From: Mytilus californianus
Taxonomy: Eukaryota
DNA: 64,000 nt
Direction: 5' to 3'
Assembly: GCF_021869535.1 (NCBI RefSeq)
Contig: NW_026262669.1
Coordinates: 8,804,001-8,868,000, forward strand
Part shown: positions 7,201 through 60,600 of the stretch, piece by piece
Numbering within the stretch: position 1 is the stretch's first letter
How the letters are laid out: every line of letters starts with the position of its first letter
Notes under the pieces: generated by a model
Told to the model about the DNA's origin: nothing
The model's database searches: none
What the model saw: the letters and a program-made list of their open reading frames with translations, nothing else
Position numbers and translations under genes: made by a program

Positions 7201-10200
7201 CCTTCAGAACTGTTAGTTTTTAAAAAAAAACAAGTGTTACAAAAAAAAACATAAAGAAAAAAAACAAAAATTTATATGGAATCAGAACTGTCCGTTTTTA
7301 ATAGAATTAAGAAATAAAAAAAAAACATATCTGAATTAACATGTCATCATCAAATTCTTTTTAGCAAGTAAATGGCTTACACAATTATGTTCATGTCATA
7401 AATCGTTAGAAGCCATGCTAGAGAAAACCAGGCATAACTTGAAAATCTTGTTCAACAAGAATTTACGGGAAAAAAATCTGTTTGCATTAAGTGCACTCTG
7501 TTTTGTAGGGAAATGTCATTGTTAACACTCATCTTGGGTTATTGTGGTTAGATATTTGATTTTAATTTTTCAGTAGATTTGACTGCCTATATAGCGAATT
7601 ACGGGTCTTATTTTCTTAACACAAACAGTCTACTATAACAGAAAATAATACTTATTCTAAATACTGACGATAAGTACATCAGAAAATGATAATAATATCT
7701 CTGGTATTTGTTGATATGTAAATTAACTTATGCATTAAGTTGTCTGGAAGTAGTACTTTGTTTTTATCTTTTTGGTATTACTTAACAGTACTAAACACGA
7801 TGCTTTGAAATGTTGTGATGTTTTGATGTAAACATGGTAAAAATGAATTTTTGTTGCACATTTTGATATATATTTAAACATCCTAATATGATTACACATT
7901 GTGTGCTGTTTGGAAACGTATGTCCTCACAAGGAGATCTTAGACGGAGATTGTAGCATGTCTACATGTGATAATGAAATCTTAGAAACTTAGACACATTC
8001 TGTACATGATTATAGATAAAGGTATAGCATTTATTACACATGGATTAATAGTCATACGTTTATTTGTTTTTGATGATAAAGTGGGAAATCTTACAGTCCA
8101 CACAACCATACAACAATACTTGGGTCCATCACCGACTATGGACACCAAAGAAAGATGTAAATGCCATAATCCTAGGCATTTGGAAAAAGGAAGGAGAATC
8201 ACTTTGAATCAGTTAAAACAGGTACATATAGTTCTAATTTATTATCGGCTGTAAAGAGAGTTCCGTTCCTGCAAACAAGAAATTAAAAAAAAAAATTGAA
8301 ATTATTACTGACATAAATTGATCCAAATAGGAATCATACATTTGCATTTTGGGCTCACTGACCAGGTTCAGTTTTCACTATGATCCTGAAAGATATTTTA
8401 CAATGCAATTATGTTTAGATAGCTAAAACAAATGCATTGCCGCCTGCAAAGAAGCTATAAAACCAGGTTTAATCCACCATTTTCTACACAAGAAAACGTC
8501 TGTACCAAATCAGGAATACTACAGTTGTTTTCCATTCGTTTGATGTGTTTAAGCTTTTGATTTTGCCAATTGTTCAGGGACTTTCCGCTTTGAATTTTCC
8601 TTGGTGGTCGGTTTTTTTGTTGATTTACTTTTTATGAACATCAAGATTGTTTTTTGTATGTTTGTTATGGATAGTTTCTGCTTGACAGCCTGTATTTTCA
8701 TATCCATACCAGAGATAGGATCAAAATTTATTGCAATGGTAACAAACGTTTCTCTTCCCACGAACGTTTCCATTTAATTTGATATGAAGAATGAGTTGAA
8801 AAGCATCTGATTTTCATTTAATTTGATTGATGGATAAATGTCAAAGTTTTCAGATTCCAGAAAAGGTACACAATGTACATGTACACTATACCTTATCATG
8901 TTCATGTTCTAATGTTGACCAAATTTTAGGGAATCATGTGTCATTTTCATGTCCCTTTGTGTTGCCATTGATAAACATTAAAGTAATATAGCACTTGTTT
9001 AACTATCGGAAATCCAATCTAGCAATGTCTAAGCTATGCATGAATATACTGGTATGATAGTCGAACTTTTCCACACAGTATGACACAAACATGTACTGTA
9101 AGCTTAATTTGTTAAAAAGCACAACAAGAGAATTGTTTAAAATTATGAGGGTAAATTCTTTTTTTGTCCACAATTGTAAAATGCTACATGTACCTATAGC
9201 TTCTTCGAAAGCACAACTATTGGACTGTAATTGATATTTAGATTATCCATCCATTTCTGATGGGAGGTCTTAAAGGATGGCAATCTTATCATACACTTTT
9301 TTTCTTTTTTCTATGTCAGTCTTACTTTAAACATGTTAAAAGAAATATGTGAAAAATTTCATATACAAATATTGAAACAGGAAAGATTTAAATCCTATGA
9401 AAATGAATGATGCTCAGTGTTCATTGAATGAGTTATACCCCTTCATGACCAATAGTGCTGACACGGGACTTAATCATTACCAATCAATCAGTCCCTTCAG
9501 AGCTCTACAATAAGGCTTGTATAATTTGTCGCTACAAGACCAACATATCTCAAAAGACAAATTATAAGTAAGGACAGTATAGAAGATCTGGATCATACAA
9601 TAGATACATGTATTTAAAATGGATGCATACGTACATCAAAATTGTAAATCTCTAACAAGATCTTCAGTTTAATAGTAAATGAACATGTAGTAAGATGATA
9701 GGTCATGGTATATATTTTCCATGTGTTCTGACGCTAACAAAATTATGATATTTAATTGTAAATGCAAAGTTCCAAATTCAAATTCCAAAAAAACTTATAA
9801 CATTTTATGATTATTTTTTAAACTGGTTGATGACACTGACTAAGAGGAAGCTATAATAGAGAGAAAGATATCAATTTGAAGTTGAAATTAATCTACTGAA
9901 TATAAAAAAAAAATAATTTAGAATCTCCTAAAGGTGCATTTACATTCATTAAGACGGAGTCTACACCATGTAAGAAAAAGTATGTGGATTGATCCGAATC
10001 TAAAATCCCTGCATAATGCACATCAAAATTAAAATGAGCACATGATACGCCCATCGCCCTTTTTGCTCATCTTTATGCTTTAAGGATGTACTCAGGTGAC
10101 AAAATCTGGAATTTAAAATTGATACTTTAAATCAGAAGTGCATTAGTTAAGGAACAAAATAAAAGCAATACAGTACAAAGTTATAATGTTCCACGATGTG

Positions 10201-21975: not shown

Positions 21976-22493
21976 TAGTCAGTCGGTTTTTTTCTGTTAA
22001 ATGTCACTGTATTTTTTTTTTTTTTTTTTGGTAAACTAATGTATCCAATATATGTATAAGTTAAGACAAATTAAAAAATAAATACAATTTAACAAGTATT
22101 TGTTGTTTTCAAAATTGTTTGACATCAGATCTGTTTAGTTTAAATATTAATATCTAACTAAGAATATAAACATATCTTGATTTTATCAACAAGTACTATG
22201 AGATGTGTATCCACAAAAGGAATCAGAATCCAAATTCACCATAAAGTATTTGATTCAGATCCATATTGTGAAATGTAAAAACTTCAATCAGAACTGTCAT
22301 TTAAACATTGTTTTATTGATGCCTTTCGATGAGTTACATTAAACCTGTAAAATTACTGTTATCTGACAAAGGAGTTTAAAGTGAAACAACAAAAATATCG
22401 AACTCCGAGGAAAATTCAAAACGGTAAGTCCGTAATCATACACAATCAATCGCTCAAACACATTAAACGAATGGATAGCAACTGTCATATTGT

Positions 22494-26500: not shown

Positions 26501-28301
26501 GAAGAATAGTATACTTGTAAATTATCTAACAATTGGACATCTGTCAAATCGACAAAATAATCCCAAAATGCCTTTAGTTTTACGTCTCAAAATTGCTCTG
26601 TACTTTTCTATTTTTGTCCAAATTAAACAATCTCAAGTGATTTTTTCGGGGAAAAATAATTTTTCTAACATAATGCAACTGTTTATAATTATTTCCTTAC
26701 TATCCCTAACAGGGGTCCTGCAAAAATAGGATCAAATTTGAAAAATATGTGTAATGTAGTCATGTTTTACAAACAAACACAATAATGATCTTTTTCAAAA
26801 TTCTTGAAAAAGTCTTTCAGCAAAATACGTTCGTATACATTTATAGCTTAATTTGTTTGTATTTCAGATGACTGAACACGATGAAAAAACCCGAATAAAA
26901 TTGTAACAATTTAGGACTATTAAAATGACCAATAACATTTCAATATCTTTCAAATTATGGTTTGTATAACTTGACTTTTGTTTTTATTCTTAAGGCAAAA
27001 AAAGTAGGAACGATCAAATATCATATTTACCGGTAATTATTTGAAAATGGAACAATATATATTCAAAAACTAATAAAAGAAAAAAAAATGAAAAATAAAA
27101 TATGATTAGCCAAAAAAAAAAAAAAAACACACTATATGTCAATTTGGTGTGTCTTTGGTAATGTTGTATAGTACTTTATTTTGCTTGTTCTCAATTCTAT
27201 TGATCAAATAAACAAACAGTTATAATATTCATACTTAAACCAAGCATTTGTCATATTGTATGTTGCCCAGTTATCCATCTTATGACATAAGGAGTTGTGA
27301 TATGTTTGCCAGTGATACAGCTATCTACCACAAATTTCGTTGTGCTATTTTCAGATCAGTAATTTTTTAGATTTTAGAGTGAATCAGGGTCGTTGTGACT
27401 TAATGCAACAATCTGCTGTAGCCACACTCTGATTTGTATATGGTACAAGTGTTGAAGATAAAAAGTGCTTCTGGTTCCAAAAGTTTAGAAGAACCTGCTT
27501 CTATGGCAGATTATAAATCTAAGCATATGTGGTATATTTGCAATGAGGATACTATTCACCACCAGAGACGTTAACAACTATATTTCACCGTCCTGCTTTC
27601 ACAACGTCACAAACCCATGAAAAGTCACGTAACGTTATCAGCCACCTGTTATTCAATGTCCAATTATATCATGCGGTAAAATAAAGTATAATATTTGTTC
27701 ATAACTGGTGGAAATTCAGTTGTATATTATGATATATAAAACATGTAGATTTGTTTGCGTAAAATGTATTATTTAGGTAAAATCCCGTTTAGAATTGCGT
27801 TCTTTCTTCACACAATTTTCTTTTCATTGCATTGATCTCAATTGAAATTAATGCTCTAAGAGGCCTGAAAAACATTAGATCATAATACGCATTTCAGATT
27901 GCAGAGTTTATATTTCGTCTTATTAATGAACAATACTGACTGCAGTATGAACATTATGTTATTTGATTAAATCTTATTGTTTCACATTGAAAGGGAAAAT
28001 ATGAACATGCAAAGCAAGCATATTTCTGCCCATTAGAACACAGATAGTGTCTCATCCCATGTTCGTTACTAGGTTTTATTTCATATATGCCTGTCTCAGA
28101 ATGTATGTGTTGTCGAAAGTTTTCCTACATCCCTTTTACCTACATGCCCTGCTGTAGTTTTCCTTTACAGAAAGAAAATGTTTAAAGATTCCGGTACATT
28201 GTAGTCATGGCAACCGAATAATCAATGTAAAAACAAACATAAATTAGTTATTTAGAGTTATCTTAGCTACAATTACATACTGATTAATTAAAACAAATAT
28301 A

Positions 28302-28325
28302 CAGTACTCGCAAGGACATACTGAG
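28302..28325 (+). repeat. Left terminal inverted repeat of the Tc1-like element
   Basis: CAGTACTCGCAAGGACATACTGAG, preceded by TA; reverse complement of 34161-34184 with 2 mismatches. Confidence 0.92.
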
Positions 28326-28333
28326 AGACATGA

Positions 28334-28394
28334 CCGACACAGTCTTCGCCCGACATGGGGTTACCGACACAGTGGCCGACACAGTGACCGACAT
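28334..28394 (+). repeat. Subterminal cluster of five CCGACA(CAG/T) motifs in the left arm
   Basis: CCGACACAG at 28334, 28364 and 28376; CCGACAT at 28350 and 28388. Confidence 0.8.
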
Positions 28395-29683
28395 GTCAGG
28401 TTAATTAATCTACCTAACACCTGCGGTGTTTGACCTCTTCACACAACTATTCAAAGTCATAAACGACACCTGATTTTACGTATGGACAGTGATCAGGTCT
28501 TATCAGTTATTTTACCTGTAGCTGTATCTCGATAAGATATTTATAGAAATGTATTCATGGTGTATTTTTGATTTGTAATAATTTATTTTTCAGGTTGAAT
28601 GACAGATTTTACAATCAGCTTCTTTTTTTGTTGATTACCTTTAAAATTTCGTCATAATTATGAAAAGCCTTCGATTACGCTATTCAAAACAGACGAATTA
28701 CTCTCGTGTAAAACCACGTGTCGTGTGATTTAATGGGAATAATATTTAAGTAAATATTTCTTTTCGATTTTAAACTTTTCCCGATTACCTTTTTTTTTTT
28801 CTTTTGAATGAAGATTGCGATGTTCTAAAATATAGCTGACCGATGTTTTTCATTGGTGTTTGTTGTTTTGTTTATCAATTATTATAGAGCAATGTATGGT
28901 GCATGTCCATTTGTTTGATTTACTGTTAATCAATACGCATGTACGTAAAGGCAGCAGACGATTTGTGTACGACCACGTGTCGTGTGATTTTAAAATGGGA
29001 AGTTATTTCTTGTGTTTTTATTTGCCACAAAAAAAAACTAAAGTAGACAGTTCAAGTAGCATATTTGTTGATTTAAAAAATCTGATTTTATGTGTACACC
29101 AAGTTTTTGTAAGAAGGCTACTTTTAAATGACATTTATAACCCGAAAGACGAGATCGTGTGTCTGTTTGGTTTATTATGTAATGAACCACAGGTACTCTG
29201 GTGGGCAGTTGATATAATTATTTTTATCTTTCTTGTTCATTCGTTAAATAAAAAGTATCACAAAAATCGATATTTTATTCATTACTAGAAAAAAAAATGC
29301 AATTAACTATGACCCCCTTTATAGCTATTCATGCCCGTAGATTGAAAAGTCCTTATACGGACATGGATATTAAATTGCTGATAGCTTGATTATTATTGAT
29401 ACCGAAGTTAATATTTTAATACAAATGTACAGGAAATAAAAAAAAAACAAACAAATACCATTTTCGTGTTCTCATCTTACCCCATTCAAAAGAGGATAAA
29501 CTTGATAAAGATAAGTGTTTTTTGTTTTGTTATCAAACTTTCAAGATCAGTTTGTACACTCGAAAATAAATATAAATAATATCCGGACAAATTTAATGAC
29601 AGAAATATGTGATATTTAATTGTACATTGTACATAACATATATTTATCAAGCAGTTTTGTCAATAATCTTCTTTCTATCCTGA

Positions 29684-31460
29684 TTACTTTCGATGAACCG
29701 GTCTTCTTAAAAGCTGATTCACTTTAGAGAGCACTCTTTCATTGAAGGCTTTATCACACATGACTTCTGGGAATACCGTAACTACGTATCTTCTGAGAAA
29801 CTCTCTTTTCTGTCTGTTTAGGGGATTCTTATTTAGTAAAACGTATACATCGTTCTTAGATTGTCGGACGTAAATAGTTCTGGGAACAGAATCGGCATAA
29901 TGTGGCATGCAAAATTTCCTGGTCCTTTAGAGGAGTGGATAGCTCTTGAGAGATCGTTCTCGGAGATCAAAAATTGTTCTGGAATGTCCGAAAATAAACT
30001 GTACGGCACAGTAAGGCTTTGTCTCATCGGCGGGGTTGACATGTTAAATCCAAATGTTGGCGAAAATGTATTTCTTTGCTCAAGTGTTGTAATGTGAGAC
30101 GTTTTAGGAGTTAAAGGTATATCCGGCAAACGTGATGAATGTGATGGTAACGGAGACGGTACGTCACTTTCATTTTCAACAGCATCTATGAGTGACCGAC
30201 GAGCTGTAGAAATTCTTTGTGTATTCTCCGACTCTTGGGGTTGAAGATGCCTAGTCACGAAAGCAAATAACTTTTCGATGGTCTCCTGCTGTTTGAGTAG
30301 CATGCGTTCTAATAGAGATGAACGAGATTGTTAATTTCCACTTGCTTTAAAATTTCTACCAAGTCATTGTCTGATGAAAAGGCTTGTCTTGTCTTTAGAA
30401 CTGGGGATTTGTCCTTTCCATTACACTCCGGCTCAGGTTCGGGTTCCACTTCCTCAATTGGCGATGTTGGTGCTATAAAATGAGGAGGAAGCTCAGGGGA
30501 TGGTGTCGGTGATCTAAATAAATATGGGTCGTTATTCCCATCTCTAATATCTACAAGTGATGCTTCTGGTTTCTGAAAAAAAAATTAAAATATAAATATA
30601 TTATATTAACTGACAACTTACAGATGCAGTTGCATGGGGTATAACTAAAAAAAACTACTTCTAGTGTGGTGACGAAAGTTATTTTGTTACTGTCGTGTGA
30701 CAAATATTACAAAACAGATTCTATTAAATACGTTAAAAAAATACTTTATATTAACTTTTTTTTAAAGAATAAAAATTGTCAATTACTGAGTGTAGAATAT
30801 GAAGTGAACGTTGTTTATTTAAACCAACTAATCAATCGAACTACATGCATGTATTCATAAACAAGTTTTATTTTCTATTTATATTTGATAACATTTGATC
30901 ATATTAAATATGAAGAAGAAAAAAATAATCATATGCAAAATAAACCGAGACAGATTTTAAAATAAAATATATCTAAAAAAATACTTACACTCCGTTCAAC
31001 ATCTTTAGGTTTTGTATTCCGTTTTCTTTTTAATGGCTTTGTCAAAGCAATGGGACTTGGTAAAAAGTAAAATCACAAAAATACTGAACTCCGAGGAAAA
31101 TTCAATCGGAAAGTCCCTAATCACATGGCAAAATCAAATGGCATCACTGACTGGACTTGAAGGTGGTGTCTCAACTGATTCTGTAGATACGTTTGGCGAG
31201 TCCGTTGTTTGCTCTAACTTCTTTTTGCATTCTTGCTCTTTTCTCCTCATGTCAAGCCATTCACCACTTTTTAAAACTGTTGCCTCATCTTTGTCTCCAT
31301 CTTTGTCACCCCAATGAACAAGATATTTCTCACCAATGCGAATACGTCCATCTATGATAATTTTGAATCTTGGACATACATAAAATCTCAAATTTGCATT
31401 TTCATCATCAAACTCGACCAGGAAATGACTTGCTTCTCGAGTCTGAAGTCTTGAAGACAT
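29684..31460 (-). pseudogene. Two-exon BEN-domain (BEND3-like) gene inside the transposon, ~425 aa when reconstructed, disrupted by three lesions
   Basis: Exon 1 is 31460-30989 (MSSRLQTREASHFLVEFDDE...KPKDVERS|GTAAGT) and exon 2 is 30572-29684 (TTTCAG|KPEASLV...RRPVHRK*). The GT-AG intron at 30988-30573 is phase 0/0 and frame-consistent. The C-terminus reads KGPGNFACHIMPILFPELFTSDNLRTMY..KNPLNRQKREFLRRYVVTVFPEV..RVLSKVNQLLRRP, matching the BEN consensus (GNFA..L...LFPELFT.ENLR..Y..K..LD......IR.YV...YP......I....RRP). Lesions: ~79-bp repeat insertion at 31061-31139, frameshift near 30325, frameshift near 29840. Confidence 0.85.
31061..31139 (-). mobile_element. ~79-bp fragment of an abundant host interspersed repeat inserted in exon 1 of the BEN gene
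   Basis: The sequence (ACTCCGAGGAAAATTCAATCGGAAAGTCCCTAATCACATGGCAAAATCAAA) matches the repeat found at 22400, 40095, 60505 and, inverted, 8560. It introduces TGA at 31134-31136; removing it restores the frame SSPVSDA-PSPIALTK. Confidence 0.85.
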
Positions 31461-32261
31461 TTTTCTTAACTGGCGATGTTGTGCGATGGTATAAGTTTTT
31501 TTAATGCGTATATTTTGACACAAACAATTGTCATGGGAATAACTAAAATATTGAATTGACACTTCCGTATAATTGTTTGCACCTTATTACAATGTACAAA
31601 CGTAAATTGTCAAAAGGTTTATTGCCATTTTGATAATCTTGTATCAAAAGCGGAAGGTATTGCATTTGCACTGACACCTTAGGCCATATGTGTGCCATCT
31701 TCGATGTGAGAAAACAACTAGATTAAGAATACACATCAAAAAAATCATCATTTTAATACATTAATCATAATATCTTGTAATGGGAGTAAATTAAATAAAC
31801 CTTAATGAACTTACTAATGCATACAATTGATACATATTTGTCCATAAATATTTTTTTTTATCAGTTTATATTGACCTTAGAATACCTGACCAGCTGTCGT
31901 CACGGTCTATGGATGCACTCAGTATTTATCGTGATCATAAATGGGATAAAACGAGGAAATTGCAATTTTATATTTTCTAAGGGAGGTTTAAAAATAGTTT
32001 TTTTTTCTGAAAAGTCTAGTGCACTTTTTATATAAATGTTAAAAAAAGTTGCATTTTAAAATTTTAAATCAGTAATATGACATTTAAAATTTATTTATTA
32101 GTGTACACATTTGAAGTTTGTTAAATGTCTCGTGTCAGATGATACATTTCCGGTACCCTAAAAATCACGCTGACAATAAATGATCACACAATTATGTCAT
32201 TCAATTTTATTATTTCTATAAAAAACAAATATTTTTTTCTAAAAATTAAATCATTCCGAAA

Positions 32262-33398
32262 ATGCCGAAATTCAAACTAACACATCATGACAATATGAAA
32301 ATTTATTCTCTGTACCAACAAGGATGGCCCGTGCATGCCATATTACGAAAGTTGTCCGCTGATGGTATAGATATTTCTTGGGGATCTGTTAAAAATGTGA
32401 TTATCAAGTACCAACATGGTCGTACTGGATATGAACATTTGTCAAGAAAGAAAATCCCGACATTTAAAAGTATTACAGATGCAGATATTGATTTTGTAAA
32501 ATCTACACTTGATGAAAATCCAACTCAAACATGCAATGACATTATGCGTCGTTTATCAGACAAGGGCACAATTACAAAAAAATCTACCGTTCGAAAAATG
32601 ATAGATTCAGCCGGATACACTGCATCAACACCTCGTTATGGACAAATGACTCGTGAGGCAAATAAATTAAAGAGAGTTGAGTTTTGTAAGCAACTTATAA
32701 CAGTCAATGAACAATTTGACGATATCATATTCACAGATGAGGCAACCGTTCAACTTCACGATAACAAAGTTGTTATATACAGAAGAAAGGATTGCGTTGC
32801 TCCTGTACTGCCGAAGCCAAAGCATCCACTAAAAGTCCACGTTTGGGGAGGCATTAGCCGACGTGGTACCCCTCAAATTTTGATCTTTGAAGGTATTCTA
32901 AAATCCGATTTCTTTGTGAATACTATACTACGACTTGGACTTTTGCCATTTATTAGACAAACTTATCCAGATCAGCACAGATTTCAACAAGACAATGACC
33001 CAAAACATCGTTCCAATCTTAGTAAGAGGTTTATGCAGGAAAACCAAATTAACTGGTGGGATATTTGGCCTTCTGAAAGCCCAGACTTTAATCCAATTGA
33101 AATGGTTTGGAGTATGATGAAGCAGCGGTTAAATAAGAAAAAACTTTCAACTAAGAATGATCTAACCAGTGGAATTAAGGATTTTTGGAAAAATGATTTA
33201 ACTGTTGAACGATGCAACACTTTTATTGACCACAATTTCAAGGTATTACCAGTGGCTGTGTTTATTGGTGGACGTGCAACAGGGGATTTACCGCAAAAGA
33301 TTTTCCCAGAGAGATCAAGGTCGAGGTCATTAAGTTATTTTAATGATCAGTTTGATTTAGAAGAGGTGAAAGAGAGACTTGCAGCAGTGAAATACTGA
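32262..33398 (+). CDS. Tc1-like DDE transposase, 378 aa, DD35E catalytic spacing, apparently intact
   Basis: Uninterrupted ORF with an N-terminal helix-rich (paired/HTH-like) region and Tc1 motifs IIFTDEA (D159), KHPLKVHVWGGIS, FQQDNDPKH (D244) and WPSESPDFNPIEMVW (E280). There are 35 residues between the second D and the E. AATAAA lies at 33422. Confidence 0.95.
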   Translation: MPKFKLTHHDNMKIYSLYQQGWPVHAILRKLSADGIDISWGSVKNVIIKYQHGRTGYEHLSRKKIPTFKSITDADIDFVKSTLDENPTQTCNDIMRRLSDKGTITKKSTVRKMIDSAGYTASTPRYGQMTREANKLKRVEFCKQLITVNEQFDDIIFTDEATVQLHDNKVVIYRRKDCVAPVLPKPKHPLKVHVWGGISRRGTPQILIFEGILKSDFFVNTILRLGLLPFIRQTYPDQHRFQQDNDPKHRSNLSKRFMQENQINWWDIWPSESPDFNPIEMVWSMMKQRLNKKKLSTKNDLTSGIKDFWKNDLTVERCNTFIDHNFKVLPVAVFIGGRATGDLPQKIFPERSRSRSLSYFNDQFDLEEVKERLAAVKY

Positions 33399-34160
33399 TT
33401 TAACAGAAAAACAGAGTCATAAATAAACAGTCCTTTTAAGGACTACCAAATTATTCAAAAAGAGTCTAAAATGTTGTAGTTTGTATGATGAGTGTCTTCA
33501 GATATATATTACTGTAATTCATTCTTTAAGTCATTCTTCTCTATTCCATAACTTTAATTTGTCTTTTCTTTATAACTGAACACCTTACAATATTTGTTTG
33601 GCCCATGTTTCAATATTCTTAATTTCCCCATCTAAACCTATATTTTAGTTCACCAATATTCTCTATTCTTTGTTTTTTGCTAGAACGATTTTCTCTATAC
33701 TTCATTTTTTTTTTGCCTATTATTCTATATTCTGAATATGATATAATTAAATGTGAGCACCCTTCTTCTGTAAAACAATATTAGGTAAAAAAAACAAATA
33801 AACAAAATAGAAATAAAAAGAAATAAAAAGAAATAAAATGAATAGAATTAAACTGAAAAAGCATATATCATGTTAAAAAGCTCAGTTTCTTTATTGAAAT
33901 AATTGAATCATTTATTTTCTTCTTCCCCTTTGGATAATATTTTTAGTACCTGTAAAAGAAGCAAAATTTGAAATTATCAGCTGATAACATATTTGTAAAC
34001 AAGGTTTTATAGTTATCATGGTTATGTAATCTAACAGATTATCATTCATGCTCCTTGATTCAGGTAACCTTAATTATTAAACAGCATGAGATCACACCTG
34101 GTTTTTGTGTCTGTCCTTAAGACTGTCATGTCAGACACAATGTCTCTCAAAGTTATCAAT

Positions 34161-34184
34161 CTCAGTATGTCCTTAAGAGTACTG
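34161..34184 (-). repeat. Right terminal inverted repeat of the Tc1-like element
   Basis: CTCAGTATGTCCTTAAGAGTACTG, followed by TA. Confidence 0.92.
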
Positions 34185-34745
34185 TATATCCCCCAACCCC
34201 TCCCCCCTCACCACAAAAATTAAAAAAAAATACAACATTATGTCAAATTTTAAAACTACAATAGATGAACATACATGTGTAAAATTGAAAAAAAAAGTTT
34301 TAAGAAAAGCCGAAAATAACAAAAATAATCATAGTTCTGTTCTTCTGCAGAATCTAGCAAAATAACTTGTCTGGGTGTTTTGAATTGATGTATACTTCGC
34401 AAAAATGCAAAAAAAAAACTCATTTTGACCCTCGTACCTCAATAGCCTCGAAAACCTCATTAATGGTCAACTAATTCCGCTCCACAATCATCTACGAGCC
34501 CCTCTGCATAGACATGCTCTATCTTCATGGCACATATCAGTTCAAAATATATCCGGTTAAGCGGTGGGAATCTCAGTAAAGTTTGACATAATTAACGAGT
34601 TGAAGGGCAGGGGCATGACCCCAAGCAAAAAAAAAAAAAAACAATTGCGTACGGAAACAGAATTGTTTATAAACGTAAATTATTCATTATTGAGGGATTC
34701 GAAACACTTGCATTTATATTCTACACTAGCAATAACTAAAAAAAT

Positions 34746-39724: not shown

Positions 39725-40900
39725 CACAACATTTGGAACTATTAAGTCTACCTCAAGTTCAACTAAGTTTGTGGCCTCGATTTGTAAACGAATGAAATTC
39801 TATAACCGTCCAAAGTATGAAAATGGAGTTTTCAACGATTTTTCAAAGAATAAAGTTTCATAACTTTGCAATGTCTTATCAAAAATTTATAAAAAAAGAA
39901 ATTATTTCAATAGATATAGTCACCAAAGTTTCATGGAAACTGCTCAAAGCGTTTTATAGTTATTGTCCGAAAACGGGAAAATCCCACCCTTTTATGAATA
40001 AATTCCTAATGCTCAAAAAAGTGATATCAGAATTTGTTTTTCAAATGAAAAGGAACGTATGTCAATAAACATATATAAAAATTAAACTACAAAATTCCGA
40101 ACTCCAAGGAAAATTCAAAACGGAAAGGCCCTTATCAATTGGCAAAATCAAAACCTCAAACACATCAAACGAACTGAAAAAAAAACTGTCATATTCCTGA
40201 TTTGGTACAGGCATTTTCTTATGTAGAAAATAGTGAATTAAACTTTGTTTTATAGCTAGCTAAACCTATCACTCGTATGATAGTCGCATAACATTTCATT
40301 ATATTGACAAACATGTGTGACCAAAACAAACAGACATAATAGGTGAAAAATGTCAAAAAATCGGGGTACAGCAGTCAACATTGTGTTATAATCTCAATCA
40401 CTATAGAAACAAACAAATATGTAAATAAAGAAAAACAGAATGCCATATAGACAAGGCATATACGCAACATTGAATCACAAGATTACAACAAATGACAACA
40501 GCACAACAACACAATGGCGGGATGTACAAATACCAATCCACGTCTAAAGGAGATTACCAAAAATGGACCAAACAGTCAACGTTAATAATTTACAAAGACA
40601 AATAAACAAACACTATAACACGTAATTAAGATGATAAACAACGTCCGTACCTAGAATCTATATATCAAGACCATCGTGTATTATTTGTGAAGTTGATACG
40701 GAATATTTATCAACAAGGTCTTGGTATCTTCCGATGAACTTTTTTAGAAAAAGGACGAGACAATTCAACAAAGTCTCATGCAAATTGGAGAACGCGTCTT
40801 TGAATTATTGTCTGAAGTGTGGACGACAGACGGACATACGGTCGGACAATGGTATACCATAATACGTTATGTAAAAGGGCGTATACAAATCACAGATAGC
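39725..40900 (+). mobile_element. Degenerate bivalve HINE/DINE-1-like (non-autonomous Helentron-type) element with a nested host repeat (40080-40745)
   Basis: CCAAAGTTTCATG..GTTATTGTCCG core, a short GACGGAC-type tract and an ATACCATAATACG..GGGCGTATA terminus. Paralogs lie at 49600-50215 and 14935-15075. The classification is from recalled family architecture only. Confidence 0.45.
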
Positions 40901-59248: not shown

Positions 59249-60600
59249 CTGTAATATAAACATAAAACAGCAATTAAAACTTGTGTCATTAACTAAACAA
59301 TGTGTTCAATAAAAATAAATGAAATGTATATTACATGCACCATTGATATAAACTGAATAAGATGATCAGTCGAACTTTAAATTCTACATAAACAACAAAT
59401 CCACAACAACTTCCGTCAGAATTGTCATCTACAATAATTAATTTCTTTAGAAAAAATATCAACTATGTATTGACAATTGATTCCTTTGGATGCGACAAAA
59501 ACAAAACAACAAGTATCGCTTATCAATATAATAAGATAATCAGCCATACTGGTTTTTTGTTTGGCATAAAAAAAACCAATATAACACGTATTGGTAGATT
59601 AAAAAAAACTATTTTATGTCAAATCTTTTAAATGATAGTTTCGAATTTAGAACGTAAACACGACTGTTTTTCATAAACTTTTTATAAACAACTATAATAA
59701 GATGTATATCAAAACAAAAAAATATCAGAAAACAAAATACAACATACACACTTTGATGAAGATCAATATTGTGAAATGTCAAAAATTTCATTTGAAACAT
59801 TTTGTTTTTAAGAAATGTATGAAATATACATTATTATCAGTGAGGTTTTTCGATGATTTACGTTAGACCTGTAAATTAAATATTTTCTGACTAAGGATTT
59901 AGCACAACATGCTCTTCTCAAATTCTTATTCAGACAAGTTCAACATATTTTGATAAATATTTTTTTTGACAAAAAGCAAACTTATTCCTTTATAATGTGT
60001 ATAATCTAATAAAGTTTGATGAGACAATATCTGTTAAAACAAAAGTTTATGACTTAGAATATAAACACAACTTGATTCTATCAACTTCTTATAAACAAGT
60101 TAAATCAGATGCTTATCAATTAGAAAAATAGAAAACAAAACACAACATTTATCAAATGGTTCTGTCCTCTTTTCTTTTAGTATTAACATCAAAGAAAACG
60201 AAGAAAATCTACCGTCATTATACTGGATATCAAAACTTCACAAAACTCCGTATAAAGAACGGTACATAGCTGGGTCATCAAGATGTTCGACAAAACATCT
60301 TTCTAAACCAAACTACTAAACAACCTTGCATTCTGTAAGATCAATATATAATTGAGATAGCTGTAGAGTTTAATTGAAATGCCAAAACTTCAATCAGAAC
60401 TGTCATTTAAACATTTTTTATTGATGCCTGTCGATGAGTTACATTAAACCTGTGTAAATACTGTTATCTGACAAAGGAGTTAAAAGTGAAATAACAAAAA
60501 TACCGAACTCCGAGGAAATTTCAAAACGGAAAGTCCGTAATCATACACAATCAATAGCTCAAACACATTAAACGAATCGATAACAACTGTCATATTCCTG

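What the first reader, a model, noticed from the sequence alone, without database searches (positions are those of the whole stretch)
29684..29960. The cargo BEN domain is of the BEND3 type
The reconstructed C-terminus KGPGNFACHIMPILFPELFTSDNLRTMY[gap]NKNPLNRQKREFLRRYVVTVFPEV..RVLSKVNQLLRRP closely follows my recollection of the last BEN repeat of vertebrate BEND3 (GNFA..LFPELFT.ENLR..Y..NK..LD..R..IR.YV..VYP..RRP). It sits after a long Ser/Pro/Glu-rich linker and a short predicted coiled stretch (SLLERMLLKQQETIEKLF), the usual layout of invertebrate single-BEN proteins. A transposon-borne BEND3-like domain would bear on where lineage-specific BEN expansions come from.
Basis: partly seen in the sequence, partly recalled or inferred. 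Interest (0 to 1): 0.7.

Follow-up and report, generated by a model that had tools for sequence, protein, structure and literature searches.

The report
Transposon-borne BEND3-type BEN gene, decayed copy
The stretch is the broken end of a DNA-binding (BEN) gene that travels inside a mussel Tc1-like transposon; its closest relatives outside bivalves are the BEN repeats of vertebrate BEND3, and the same gene sits beside the same kind of transposase in mussels, oysters and clams.

Summary
Observation confirmed. The quoted peptides lie in two minus-strand ORFs (29833-30303 and 29684-29908). The "gap" between them is a 13-nt deletion inside the BEN domain.

An intact sister copy in Mytilus coruscus, identical apart from that deletion:
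- passes Pfam BEN (28.5 bits, cut-off 23.2);
- hits only BEND3 chains in the PDB (BEN4 6.6e-14);
- folds at pLDDT 92 onto BEND3 BEN4 and BEN3 (TM 0.71-0.81).

Among 1.84 billion proteins only 181 match. They are vertebrate BEND3, molluscipoxvirus MC036R-type proteins, and a large single-BEN clade whose named members are all bivalves. "BEND3 type" is therefore supported. The domain is not a BEND3 orthologue and is not resolved as sister to the last repeat. It also ends where BEND3's helix alpha6 begins.

"Cargo" undersells the gene. Seven of nine sampled BEN subfamilies (Mytilus, Ostrea, Saccostrea, Ruditapes, one unnamed assembly) have the BEN gene head-to-head with a Tc1-like transposase. The two genes co-diverge, and the BEN ORF shows dN/dS 0.22.

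The window copy is dead: a 73-nt insertion, a 1-nt deletion and the 13-nt deletion. No expression was seen. The scan noted the same two-gene arrangement on another piece of this genome.

The parts
28302..34184 (.). Two-gene Tc1-like DNA transposon (5883 bp), flanked by TA on both sides
   Evidence: 30-nt inverted repeat arms 28297-28326 / 34160-34189, 93% complementary. Four M. coruscus copies lose similarity to the window exactly at these ends.
28302..28326 (+). Left terminal inverted repeat (CAGTACTCGCAAGG...)
34160..34184 (-). Right terminal inverted repeat (CAGTACTCTTAAGG...)
29684..31460 (-). BEN gene, here a pseudogene. ATG at 31460, stop codon 29684-29686, two exons.
   Evidence: ORFs. 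Gene structure matches the M. coruscus gene models P0002 and P0004.
30989..31460 (-). Exon 1: N-terminal domain plus a basic KRKR stretch. It ends ...AGT followed by a GTAAGT donor.
   Evidence: Sequence. P0002 reads ...KRS|KPEASLV across the splice.
31206..31460 (-). N-terminal beta-barrel plus helix domain, Tudor-like
   Evidence: AF2 pLDDT 82. The three best VIA matches are Tudor domains: ARID4B Z 6.4, JMJD2C Z 5.8 (rmsd 2.1), RBBP1 Z 5.6; the next match is Z 4.3. Foldseek is weak, E 0.2-0.4. The domain is conserved in L005, L006, L008, L009 and L011.
31065..31138 (.). Insertion of a short high-copy repeat that disrupts exon 1 (net 73 nt)
   Evidence: Absent from L002 and L004. Contigs of three runs skip 31064->31139. 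Other copies in the window at 8556, 22378, 40076 and 60479.
30573..30988 (-). Intron (GT..AG, 416 nt)
   Evidence: Sequence and gene model P0002. No spliced read was recovered.
29684..30572 (-). Exon 2: acidic/Pro-rich linker, helix, Ser/Thr/Pro linker, BEN domain. It is read in three frames because of two deletions.
30326..30327 (-). Site of a 1-nt deletion (first frameshift; intact copies read ...EINNARSS...)
   Evidence: Reads have one extra base here.
30265..30318 (-). Short conserved helix SLLERMLLKQQETIEKLF, a possible coiled coil
   Evidence: Sequence. Similar helix in L005, P0079 and P0186. Coiled-coil propensity was not computed.
29687..30018 (-). BEND3-type BEN domain, split at 29835/29836
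   Evidence: tblastn with the intact domain: residues 1-61 at 30018-29836 (100% identity) and 55-115 at 29881-29687. PDB and Pfam hits.
29835..29836 (-). Site of the 13-nt deletion (second frameshift). It removes the family-conserved GGGK(L) loop just before the invariant Lys.
   Evidence: All three runs with contigs here carry the 13 bases.
32262..33398 (+). Tc1-type transposase ORF, 378 aa, uninterrupted, divergent from the BEN gene
   Evidence: Pfam DDE_3 52.7 bits and HTH_Tnp_Tc3_2 39.1 bits. D..D(35)E spacing read directly from the sequence.
28331..28385 (+). Three subterminal copies of TGACCGACACAGT next to the left TIR. Candidate protein-binding sites, untested.
   Evidence: conserved in copy L002
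28706..28990 (+). Two 26-nt repeats (28706-28731, 28965-28990) that contain CCACGTG. Candidate binding sites, untested.
   Evidence: conserved in L002, absent from other element families

Best explanation
The stretch is the C-terminal BEN domain of the second gene of a two-gene Tc1-like transposon (28302-34184) in a Mytilus-type mussel genome. The gene runs divergently from the transposase. It encodes a Tudor-like N-terminal barrel, a basic stretch, a linker, a short helix, a second linker and a single C-terminal BEN domain. The BEN domain belongs to the BEND3-like subfamily: its nearest relatives outside bivalves are BEND3 BEN4, BEN3 and BD1 and the molluscipoxvirus MC036R-type proteins. It sits in a large clade of single-BEN proteins whose named members are all bivalves. 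It is not a BEND3 orthologue and lacks helix alpha6. The gene is an inherited component of the element lineage, not a recent passenger. The window copy is dead, with a 73-nt insertion, a 1-nt deletion and a 13-nt deletion in the BEN loop. How it works is inferred, not shown. I think the protein binds DNA sequence-specifically through alpha5 and the conserved RRP loop, most likely at repeats inside its own element. There it would serve the transposon by recruiting or positioning the transposase, or by regulating the shared divergent promoter, much as the Myb-like partner protein does in PIF/Harbinger elements. I put about 0.35-0.4 on that mechanistic part.
For: Identity of the domain:
- The window halves hit BEND3 BEN4 collinearly, at 1.1e-7 and 0.02.
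- The intact sister domain P0003:296-410 is identical to the window apart from the deletion. It scores 28.5 bits on Pfam BEN and 6.6e-14 on BEN4, with no non-BEND3 BEN structure at E<=10.
- A profile built from bivalve sequences only gives BEN4 8.6e-31, BEN3 1.3e-25 and BD1 4.3e-17, with no other BEN structure at E<=10.
- The AF2 model has pLDDT 92.3. Foldseek gives BEN4 TM 0.74/0.81 and BEN3 0.71/0.79. BANP and BEND6 come at E>0.02, and Insv, NACC1 and Bsg25A at E>1.
- The exhaustive phmmer search finds 181 hits. Anchovy BEND3 ranks third, with per-repeat scores BD4 50.5, BD3 41.9, BD1 21.3 and BD2 17.7 bits.
- Named hits are BEND3 or BEND3-like fish proteins, MC036R, EMCLV039R and 17 bivalve proteins.

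Part of the element:
- Four M. coruscus copies share the window's TIR boundaries. One is full length and three carry internal deletions.
- A Tc1-like transposase lies head-to-head with a diverged BEN gene in L005, L006, L008, L009, L011/L012 and L013.
- L005 has its own TA|CAGTAC... TIR pair around both genes.
- The transposase and BEN trees share the supported clades, and pairwise identities correlate at r 0.92.
- dN/dS is 0.22 over 187 codons between two sublineages (Fisher p 2e-5), while dS of 0.16 is about the same as the non-coding divergence.

DNA-binding residues, mapped on Zheng et al. 2022 (PMC8887127): Asn738, Lys769, Arg810, Arg811, Pro812 and Lys816 equivalents are kept, and the family consensus is NExLRRP.
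Against: - No DNA-binding or transposition data exist.
- Three of the four base-contacting residues of BEND3 BD4 differ in this family (Glu807->Gln, Arg814->His, Lys815->Arg), and alpha6 is absent.
- The candidate binding repeats are conserved only within this element family.
- RNA raw reads gave no coverage of either gene, and no spliced contig was found.
- All five copies of this family that were examined are damaged somewhere, so the family may be extinct.
- Two sampled BEN genes (Sinanodonta L007, Dreissena L010) have no transposase within 8 kb.
- The tree has no type I BEN outgroup, so its root and the direction of descent are unknown.
Confidence: 0.8

Rival explanations
1. Recent passenger. 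A host BEND3-like gene was captured once by a Tc1 element and is carried along without any role for the element.
For: The gene has an intron and a host-like multidomain layout. Solo BEN genes with no transposase within 8 kb exist in Sinanodonta and Dreissena, so host copies could have been a source.
Against: The same head-to-head pair occurs in element families only 34-49% identical in BEN and 45-60% identical in transposase, across Mytilida, Ostreida and Venerida. The two genes share the supported clades. dN/dS is 0.22. A capture would have to be ancient, and that makes the gene a component of the lineage anyway.
Confidence: 0.1
2. Host gene family with transposase debris nearby by chance. 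Bivalve genomes are full of Tc1 relics, so the adjacency may mean nothing.
For: Bivalve genomes are repeat-rich. Several loci hold only transposase fragments (L006, L008, L009).
Against: Orientation and spacing recur: divergent genes, starts about 0.8-2 kb apart. The copies are bounded by shared TIR ends. L011 and L012 are two loci with a 99.7% identical 7.9-kb unit holding both genes. The fragment patterns fit internal deletions joining the transposase C-terminal part to BEN exon 2.
Confidence: 0.04
3. The gene is intact in the animal, and the frameshifts are assembly errors.
For: Contigs from DNA and RNA runs carry the undeleted forms at 29835 and 30326 and lack the insertion at 31065-31138.
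Against: Those contigs are 1-5% different from the window elsewhere, and the family has several copies, so they probably come from other copies. A 73-nt repeat insertion and a 13-nt deletion are not typical consensus errors. Every other copy examined carries its own, different lesions.
Confidence: 0.05

Closest known systems
BEND3 BEN4 (BD4) and BEN3, the 'type II' BEN domains of Zheng et al. 2022 (PMC8887127); PDB 7W27, 7V9F-I, 7V9H
   Same: About 31-34% identity over the whole domain. The signature GNFA...LFPELFT..NLR..Y....NK..L......YV...YP......RRP is shared. There is a short loop before the Lys769 equivalent. Arg810, Arg811 and Pro812 are conserved. Fold match TM 0.71-0.81.
   Different: One BEN domain, not four. 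The protein ends at the Lys816 equivalent, so there is no alpha6. Glu807, Arg814 and Lys815 are replaced in this family. It lies in a separate clade (100/98) and is not nested among the BEND3 repeats.
Molluscipoxvirus MC036R / EMCLV039R multi-BEN proteins
   Same: They fall in the same restricted set of 181 hits, and Zheng et al. class MC036R as type II.
   Different: Their repeats pair with BEND3 BD1, BD3 and BD4 individually, so they look like relatives of BEND3 itself. The bivalve domains stand outside that group.
BEN-solo factors (Drosophila Insv, Elba1/2; mammalian BEND5/6)
   Same: Layout: one C-terminal BEN domain preceded by linkers and a helix.
   Different: No sequence hit at E<=10, and Foldseek E>0.06 (BEND6) or >1 (Insv, Bsg25A). 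These are type I domains, with a long alpha3-alpha4 loop that is used for DNA contacts.
PIF/Harbinger two-gene DNA transposons (transposase plus Myb-like DNA-binding partner)
   Same: A DNA transposon with a second gene for a DNA-binding protein that is inherited with the transposase. This is the working analogy for function.
   Different: Unrelated transposase superfamily and unrelated DNA-binding fold. A partner role for the BEN protein has not been tested.
Canonical Tc1/mariner elements (Tc1, Sleeping Beauty, DD35E groups)
   Same: DDE_3 plus HTH_Tnp_Tc3_2 transposase, TA target duplication, CAGT... termini, and internally deleted derivatives.
   Different: Canonical elements carry one gene (my own knowledge). 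This lineage is about 5.9 kb and carries a conserved second gene.

Membership tests
BEN domain (Pfam PF10523) | Score above the curated Pfam cut-off (23.2 bits) | tested here: met
   The intact sister domain, identical to the window apart from the 13-nt deletion, scores 28.5 bits. 45 of 48 clade members match. The window's own pieces do not pass alone: the C-terminal half scores 17.9 bits and the N-terminal half gets no hit.
BEN domain (Pfam PF10523) | All-alpha BEN fold | tested here: met
   AF2 pLDDT 92.3. The 17 best Foldseek PDB matches are all BEN domains: BEND3, BANP and BEND6.
BEND3-like / type II BEN (Zheng et al. 2022) | Closer in sequence and fold to BEND3 BD4/BD3 than to type I BEN domains | tested here: met
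   Only BEND3 chains hit by sequence. BEND3 chains lead by fold. BEND3 is the top non-bivalve hit among 1.84 billion proteins.
BEND3-like / type II BEN (Zheng et al. 2022) | C-terminal alpha5-loop-alpha6 DNA-reading unit | tested here: not met
   Alpha5 and the RRP loop are present, but the ORF stops at the Lys816 equivalent. The model has no helix after residue 109. Many clade members also end within a few residues.
BEND3-like / type II BEN (Zheng et al. 2022) | Base-contacting residues Glu807, Arg810, Arg814, Lys815 | tested here: inconclusive
   Arg810 is kept. In this family Glu807->Gln, though Glu is the clade consensus. Arg814->His and Lys815->Arg.
BEND3 orthologue | Four tandem BEN domains | tested here: not met
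   There is a single C-terminal BEN domain.
BEND3 orthologue | Nested among BEND3 repeats, specifically with BD4 | tested here: inconclusive
   The bivalve clade is split from all BEND3 and poxvirus repeats at 100/98 support. Forcing it together with BD4 costs 4.95 lnL, AU p 0.10.
Tc1/mariner transposon (context) | DDE transposase with HTH, TIRs, TA target duplication, several copies with shared ends | tested here: met
Tc1/mariner transposon (context) | Single gene | tested here: not met
   A second, conserved gene lies inside the TIRs.
Tudor / Royal-family barrel (N-terminal domain) | Five-stranded barrel with a significant structural match, and an aromatic cage | tested here: inconclusive
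   The three best VIA matches are Tudor domains at Z 5.6-6.4, below the tool's caution level of 8. Foldseek E 0.2-0.4. No Pfam hit apart from a sub-threshold NTR match. The aromatic cage was not examined.

The most novel reading that the evidence does not exclude
This is a two-component Tc1-like transposon. The Tudor-like/BEND3-type BEN protein would be a required or strongly helpful cofactor that reads the element's own subterminal repeats, and perhaps chromatin, for the transposase. Amplification of such elements would then have produced the large bivalve expansion of BEND3-like BEN genes. A further, weaker possibility is that the BEND3-type domain of vertebrates, and through them of molluscipoxviruses, shares an origin with such a mobile gene.
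Probability: 0.3. Interest if true: 0.8.

Novelty: new variant of a known kind. Interest (0 to 1): 0.62.

Why it matters
As far as I know, Tc1/mariner elements are the textbook one-gene DNA transposons. A lineage that has kept a second, selected gene for a chromatin-type DNA-binding protein across bivalve orders would be a new architecture for the superfamily. It would also give a concrete source for lineage-specific BEN expansions, because every amplification of the element makes new BEN genes and chimeric gene models.

The work also shows that BEND3-like BEN domains are not confined to vertebrates and their poxviruses. That gives BEND3 biology an invertebrate, mobile relative for comparing DNA recognition without helix alpha6.

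I found no paper on Tc1-linked BEN genes in the held library. That is not proof that none exists.

Tried and rejected
- ESM Atlas look-ups of the two larger pieces gave only sub-0.9 leads (BEN clusters at 0.86-0.87; unnamed clusters for the N-terminus) and were not used as evidence. One call failed on a frame slip.
- The Pfam NTR match of exon 1 (21.3 bits, below cut-off) is treated as chance.
- Word-index searches reach only close Mytilus copies because of the length filter. The third returned only the query's own cluster.
- Profile A1 contained BEND3 rows, so its PDB hits are circular. I replaced it with the bivalve-only profile A2.
- I looked for a BEND3-like CCACGYG site or the window's subterminal repeats in other element families and found none shared. 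The repeats remain candidates for this family only.
- RNA evidence: raw reads cover nothing but the short high-copy repeat. RNA-library contigs also cover non-coding parts and show no splice, so expression is not shown.
- I considered that the ORF might continue into a downstream exon supplying alpha6, since a GTAAT overlaps the stop codon. No coding ORF lies between the stop and the TIR, no read supports it, and most relatives also stop here, so I dropped the idea.
- The tools take no read-through of stops by reference. I therefore searched the pieces apart and used natural intact sister copies.
Full report
**What is in the sequence**

On the minus strand, a 156-aa ORF (29833-30303) ends ...KGPGNFACHIMPILFPELFTSDNLRTMYTFY. 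A 74-aa ORF in another frame (29684-29908) holds ...NKNPLNRQKREFLRRYVVTVFPEV...RVLSKVNQLLRRPVHRK.

Each half on its own points to the same protein:
- The N-terminal half hits BEND3 BEN4 chains at E 1.1e-7, over chain residues 1-48.
- The C-terminal half hits the same chains over residues 53-101 (E 0.02) and Pfam BEN at E 0.0036, below the cut-off.

**The intact form**

A word search with the 156-aa piece found Mytilus coruscus gene models at 85-99% identity. A second search found P0003, whose last 115 residues equal the window's two pieces joined by five extra residues, GGGKL.

DNA alignment with four M. coruscus copies, together with contigs of three public runs, shows three lesions in the window copy:
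- a 13-nt deletion after 29835;
- a 1-nt deletion after 30326;
- a 73-nt insertion of a short high-copy repeat at 31065-31138, in exon 1.

The gene model is ATG 31460, exon 1 to 30989, a GT..AG intron 30988-30573, exon 2 to the stop at 29684-29686. This agrees with P0002 and P0004. The window copy is a pseudogene. Because the tools take no read-through of stops, I searched the pieces apart and used the natural intact sister copies.

**Is it a BEN domain, and of which kind?**

The intact domain:
- passes Pfam BEN at 28.5 bits against a cut-off of 23.2, and 45 of 48 relatives match;
- by phmmer against all PDB sequences, hits BEND3 BEN4 at 6.6e-14 over the whole chain, BEN3 (7V9H) at 3.3e-10 and BD1 (5JNO) at 2e-3, with no other solved BEN domain at E<=10.

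A profile built only from bivalve sequences, so that it is not circular, gives BEN4 8.6e-31, BEN3 1.3e-25 and BD1 4.3e-17, and again no other BEN structure.

An AlphaFold2 model (pLDDT 92.3) matches as follows in Foldseek:

| Structure | Result |
|---|---|
| BEND3 BEN4 | TM 0.74/0.81 and 0.76/0.78 |
| BEND3 BEN3 | TM 0.71/0.79 |
| BEND3 BD1 | next in rank |
| BANP, BEND6 | E > 0.02 |
| Bsg25A, NACC1, Insv | E > 1 |

An exhaustive phmmer search of 1.84 billion representatives found only 181 proteins at E<=1e-3. After the query's own copies, the best hit is BEND3 of the anchovy, with per-repeat scores BD4 50.5, BD3 41.9, BD1 21.3 and BD2 17.7 bits. Other multi-BEN hits are fish BEND3-like proteins, MC036R of molluscum contagiosum virus and EMCLV039R. 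These poxvirus proteins are the ones Zheng et al. 2022 (PMC8887127) class with BEND3-BD4 as 'type II' BEN domains.

**Limits of the BEND3 label**

In a careful tree of 41 domains, the 24 single-BEN rows form one side of a 100/98 split. All BEND3 and poxvirus repeats form the other side. Within that second side, BD1, BD3 and BD4 each pair with a poxvirus repeat (the 143-row tree agrees). Forcing the bivalve clade together with BD4 costs 4.95 log-likelihood units (AU p 0.10). A special tie to the last repeat is therefore neither supported nor excluded. No type I BEN domain entered the tree because none was hit, so the root is unknown.

I mapped the alignment onto the contacts described by Zheng et al.:
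- Kept: Asn738, Lys769 (the one invariant column of the family), Arg810, Arg811, Pro812 and Lys816.
- Changed in this family: Arg742 becomes His, Glu807 becomes Gln (Glu is the clade consensus, NExLRRP), Arg814 becomes His and Lys815 becomes Arg.
- The protein stops at the Lys816 equivalent, so helix alpha6 (816-828 in BEND3) is absent. The model ends in a coil after alpha5. Many relatives also end within a few residues.

The 13-nt deletion in the window removes the GGGK(L) loop. That loop corresponds to the phosphate-contacting 763-767 region of BD4. The deletion also puts everything after it out of frame.

**Context: cargo or component?**

The gene lies inside a 5883-bp element (28302-34184). 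The element has 25-30-nt TIRs that begin CAGTAC and a TA on each flank. It carries an uninterrupted 378-aa Tc1-type transposase ORF (32262-33398; DDE_3 and HTH_Tnp_Tc3_2) that is divergent from the BEN gene.

Four M. coruscus loci lose similarity to the window exactly at the TIR ends. One is full length at 96-97% identity. Three have internal deletions that remove parts of one or both genes.

More telling are the BEN genes that are only 34-49% identical to this one. They sit in the same head-to-head arrangement with a transposase that is 45-60% identical:
- a second M. coruscus family (L005, with its own TA|CAGTAC TIR pair);
- M. galloprovincialis (L006);
- Ruditapes philippinarum (L008);
- Saccostrea echinata (L009);
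- Ostrea edulis (L013);
- an unnamed ENA assembly, where a 7.9-kb unit with both genes is 99.7% identical at two loci (L011, L012).

Two sampled genes (Sinanodonta L007, Dreissena L010) have no transposase within 8 kb. That makes seven of nine sampled subfamilies linked to a transposase.

The transposase and BEN trees share the supported clades, and pairwise identities correlate at Pearson r 0.92, although the pairs are not independent. Between two sublineages of the window's family, exon 2 has dN/dS 0.22 (BEN 0.17; Fisher p 2e-5). Its dS of 0.16 matches the roughly 15% divergence of the non-coding flank. The BEN gene is thus an inherited, selected component of the element lineage.

All 17 named single-BEN hits come from bivalves: Mytilus (four species), Ostrea, Saccostrea, Pinctada, Ruditapes, Dreissena and Sinanodonta.

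**The rest of the protein**

Exon 1 encodes an approximately 70-aa domain that is conserved across element families. AlphaFold2 folds it as a beta-barrel followed by a helix (pLDDT 82). Its three best structural matches are Tudor domains (ARID4B, JMJD2C, RBBP1; Z 5.6-6.4, the next match Z 4.3). These values are below the tool's caution level, and Foldseek is weak. I call it Tudor-like with moderate confidence.

After it come a KRKR-type basic stretch, an acidic/Pro-rich linker, the helix SLLERMLLKQQETIEKLF and a Ser/Thr/Pro linker. Relatives have a comparable helix. Its coiled-coil nature was not tested.

**How it most likely works**

Shown: this is a BEND3-like BEN fold with the RRP loop and several phosphate contacts conserved. 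It is encoded by a transposon, under purifying selection, and co-inherited with the transposase.

Inferred: it binds DNA sequence-specifically and acts for the element. It may help the transposase find or assemble on the ends, as the Myb-like partner does in PIF/Harbinger elements. Alternatively it may regulate the approximately 0.8-kb divergent promoter, given that BEND3 is a repressor. The Tudor-like domain may add a chromatin contact.

Candidate sites are three TGACCGACACAGT copies next to the left TIR and two 26-nt repeats containing CCACGTG. Both sets are conserved in the full-length sister copy but not in other families. That pattern is what family-specific recognition would give, but it is also what chance within one family would give.

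No expression was detected. RNA raw reads cover only the short high-copy repeat, and RNA-library contigs cover non-coding parts without the splice.

**Literature and earlier notes**

Searches of the held library for BEN with Tc1, transposase, bivalve or DD35E found nothing relevant. The scan's own notes list this element (s1-345111) and a similar two-gene element on another piece of the same genome (s1-312199). I verified the first and did not examine the second.

**Verdict**

The more interesting result is that this subfamily in bivalves is the partner gene of a Tc1-like transposon lineage. The window's own copy is a dead one.

Noticed in passing
window 31065-31138; also 8556-8634, 22378-22449, 40076-40152, 60479-60554: A ~75-79-bp repeat (81-84% identical copies) is inserted in exon 1 of the BEN gene. 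In reads its depth is thousands of times that of the surrounding element (212,720 against about 30 in a DNA run), and it is abundant in RNA raw reads. It is probably part of a very high-copy SINE or MITE.
   Followed up: partly
window 28331-28385, 28706-28731 and 28965-28990: Three subterminal TGACCGACACAGT copies lie beside the left TIR. Two 26-nt repeats containing CCACGTG lie in the 1.4 kb between the BEN stop codon and the TIR. Both sets are conserved in the full-length M. coruscus copy but not in other element families.
   Followed up: partly
window 31206-31460 (-): The BEN protein starts with a conserved ~70-aa beta-barrel whose best structural matches are Tudor domains (Z 5.6-6.4). It has no Pfam family.
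   Followed up: partly
L011:5211-13073 and L012:5212-13071 (ENA ERZ26273219): A 7.9-kb unit with a Tc1-like transposase and an intronless 493-aa BEN ORF is 99.7% identical at two loci, so this family looks recently active. The BEN linker holds tandem repeats of about 47 aa. Polinton-type DNA_pol_B_2 genes lie nearby. An ORF resembling the N-terminal domain sits apart, on the far side of the transposase.
   Followed up: no
L001, L003, L009; proteins P0003, P0010, P0038: Public gene models built on deleted element copies are chimeric. P0003 fuses unrelated coiled-coil exons to BEN exon 2. P0010 is named microsomal prostaglandin-E synthase 2 but carries this BEN domain. Transposon copies thus feed BEN exons into annotated 'genes'.
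   Followed up: no
window 5402, 10169, 16312, 19626, 53341 (+) and 9093, 20790, 58002 (-): Further TACAGTAC termini of the same TIR stem occur in the window. They may be ends of related non-autonomous elements (compare scan note s1-345144).
   Followed up: no
tree; P0034, P0085: The repeats of the molluscipoxvirus MC036R and EMCLV039R proteins pair one-to-one with BEND3 BD1, BD3 and BD4. This suggests that the viral proteins are relatives of a whole BEND3-like gene and not independent BEN arrays.
   Followed up: no
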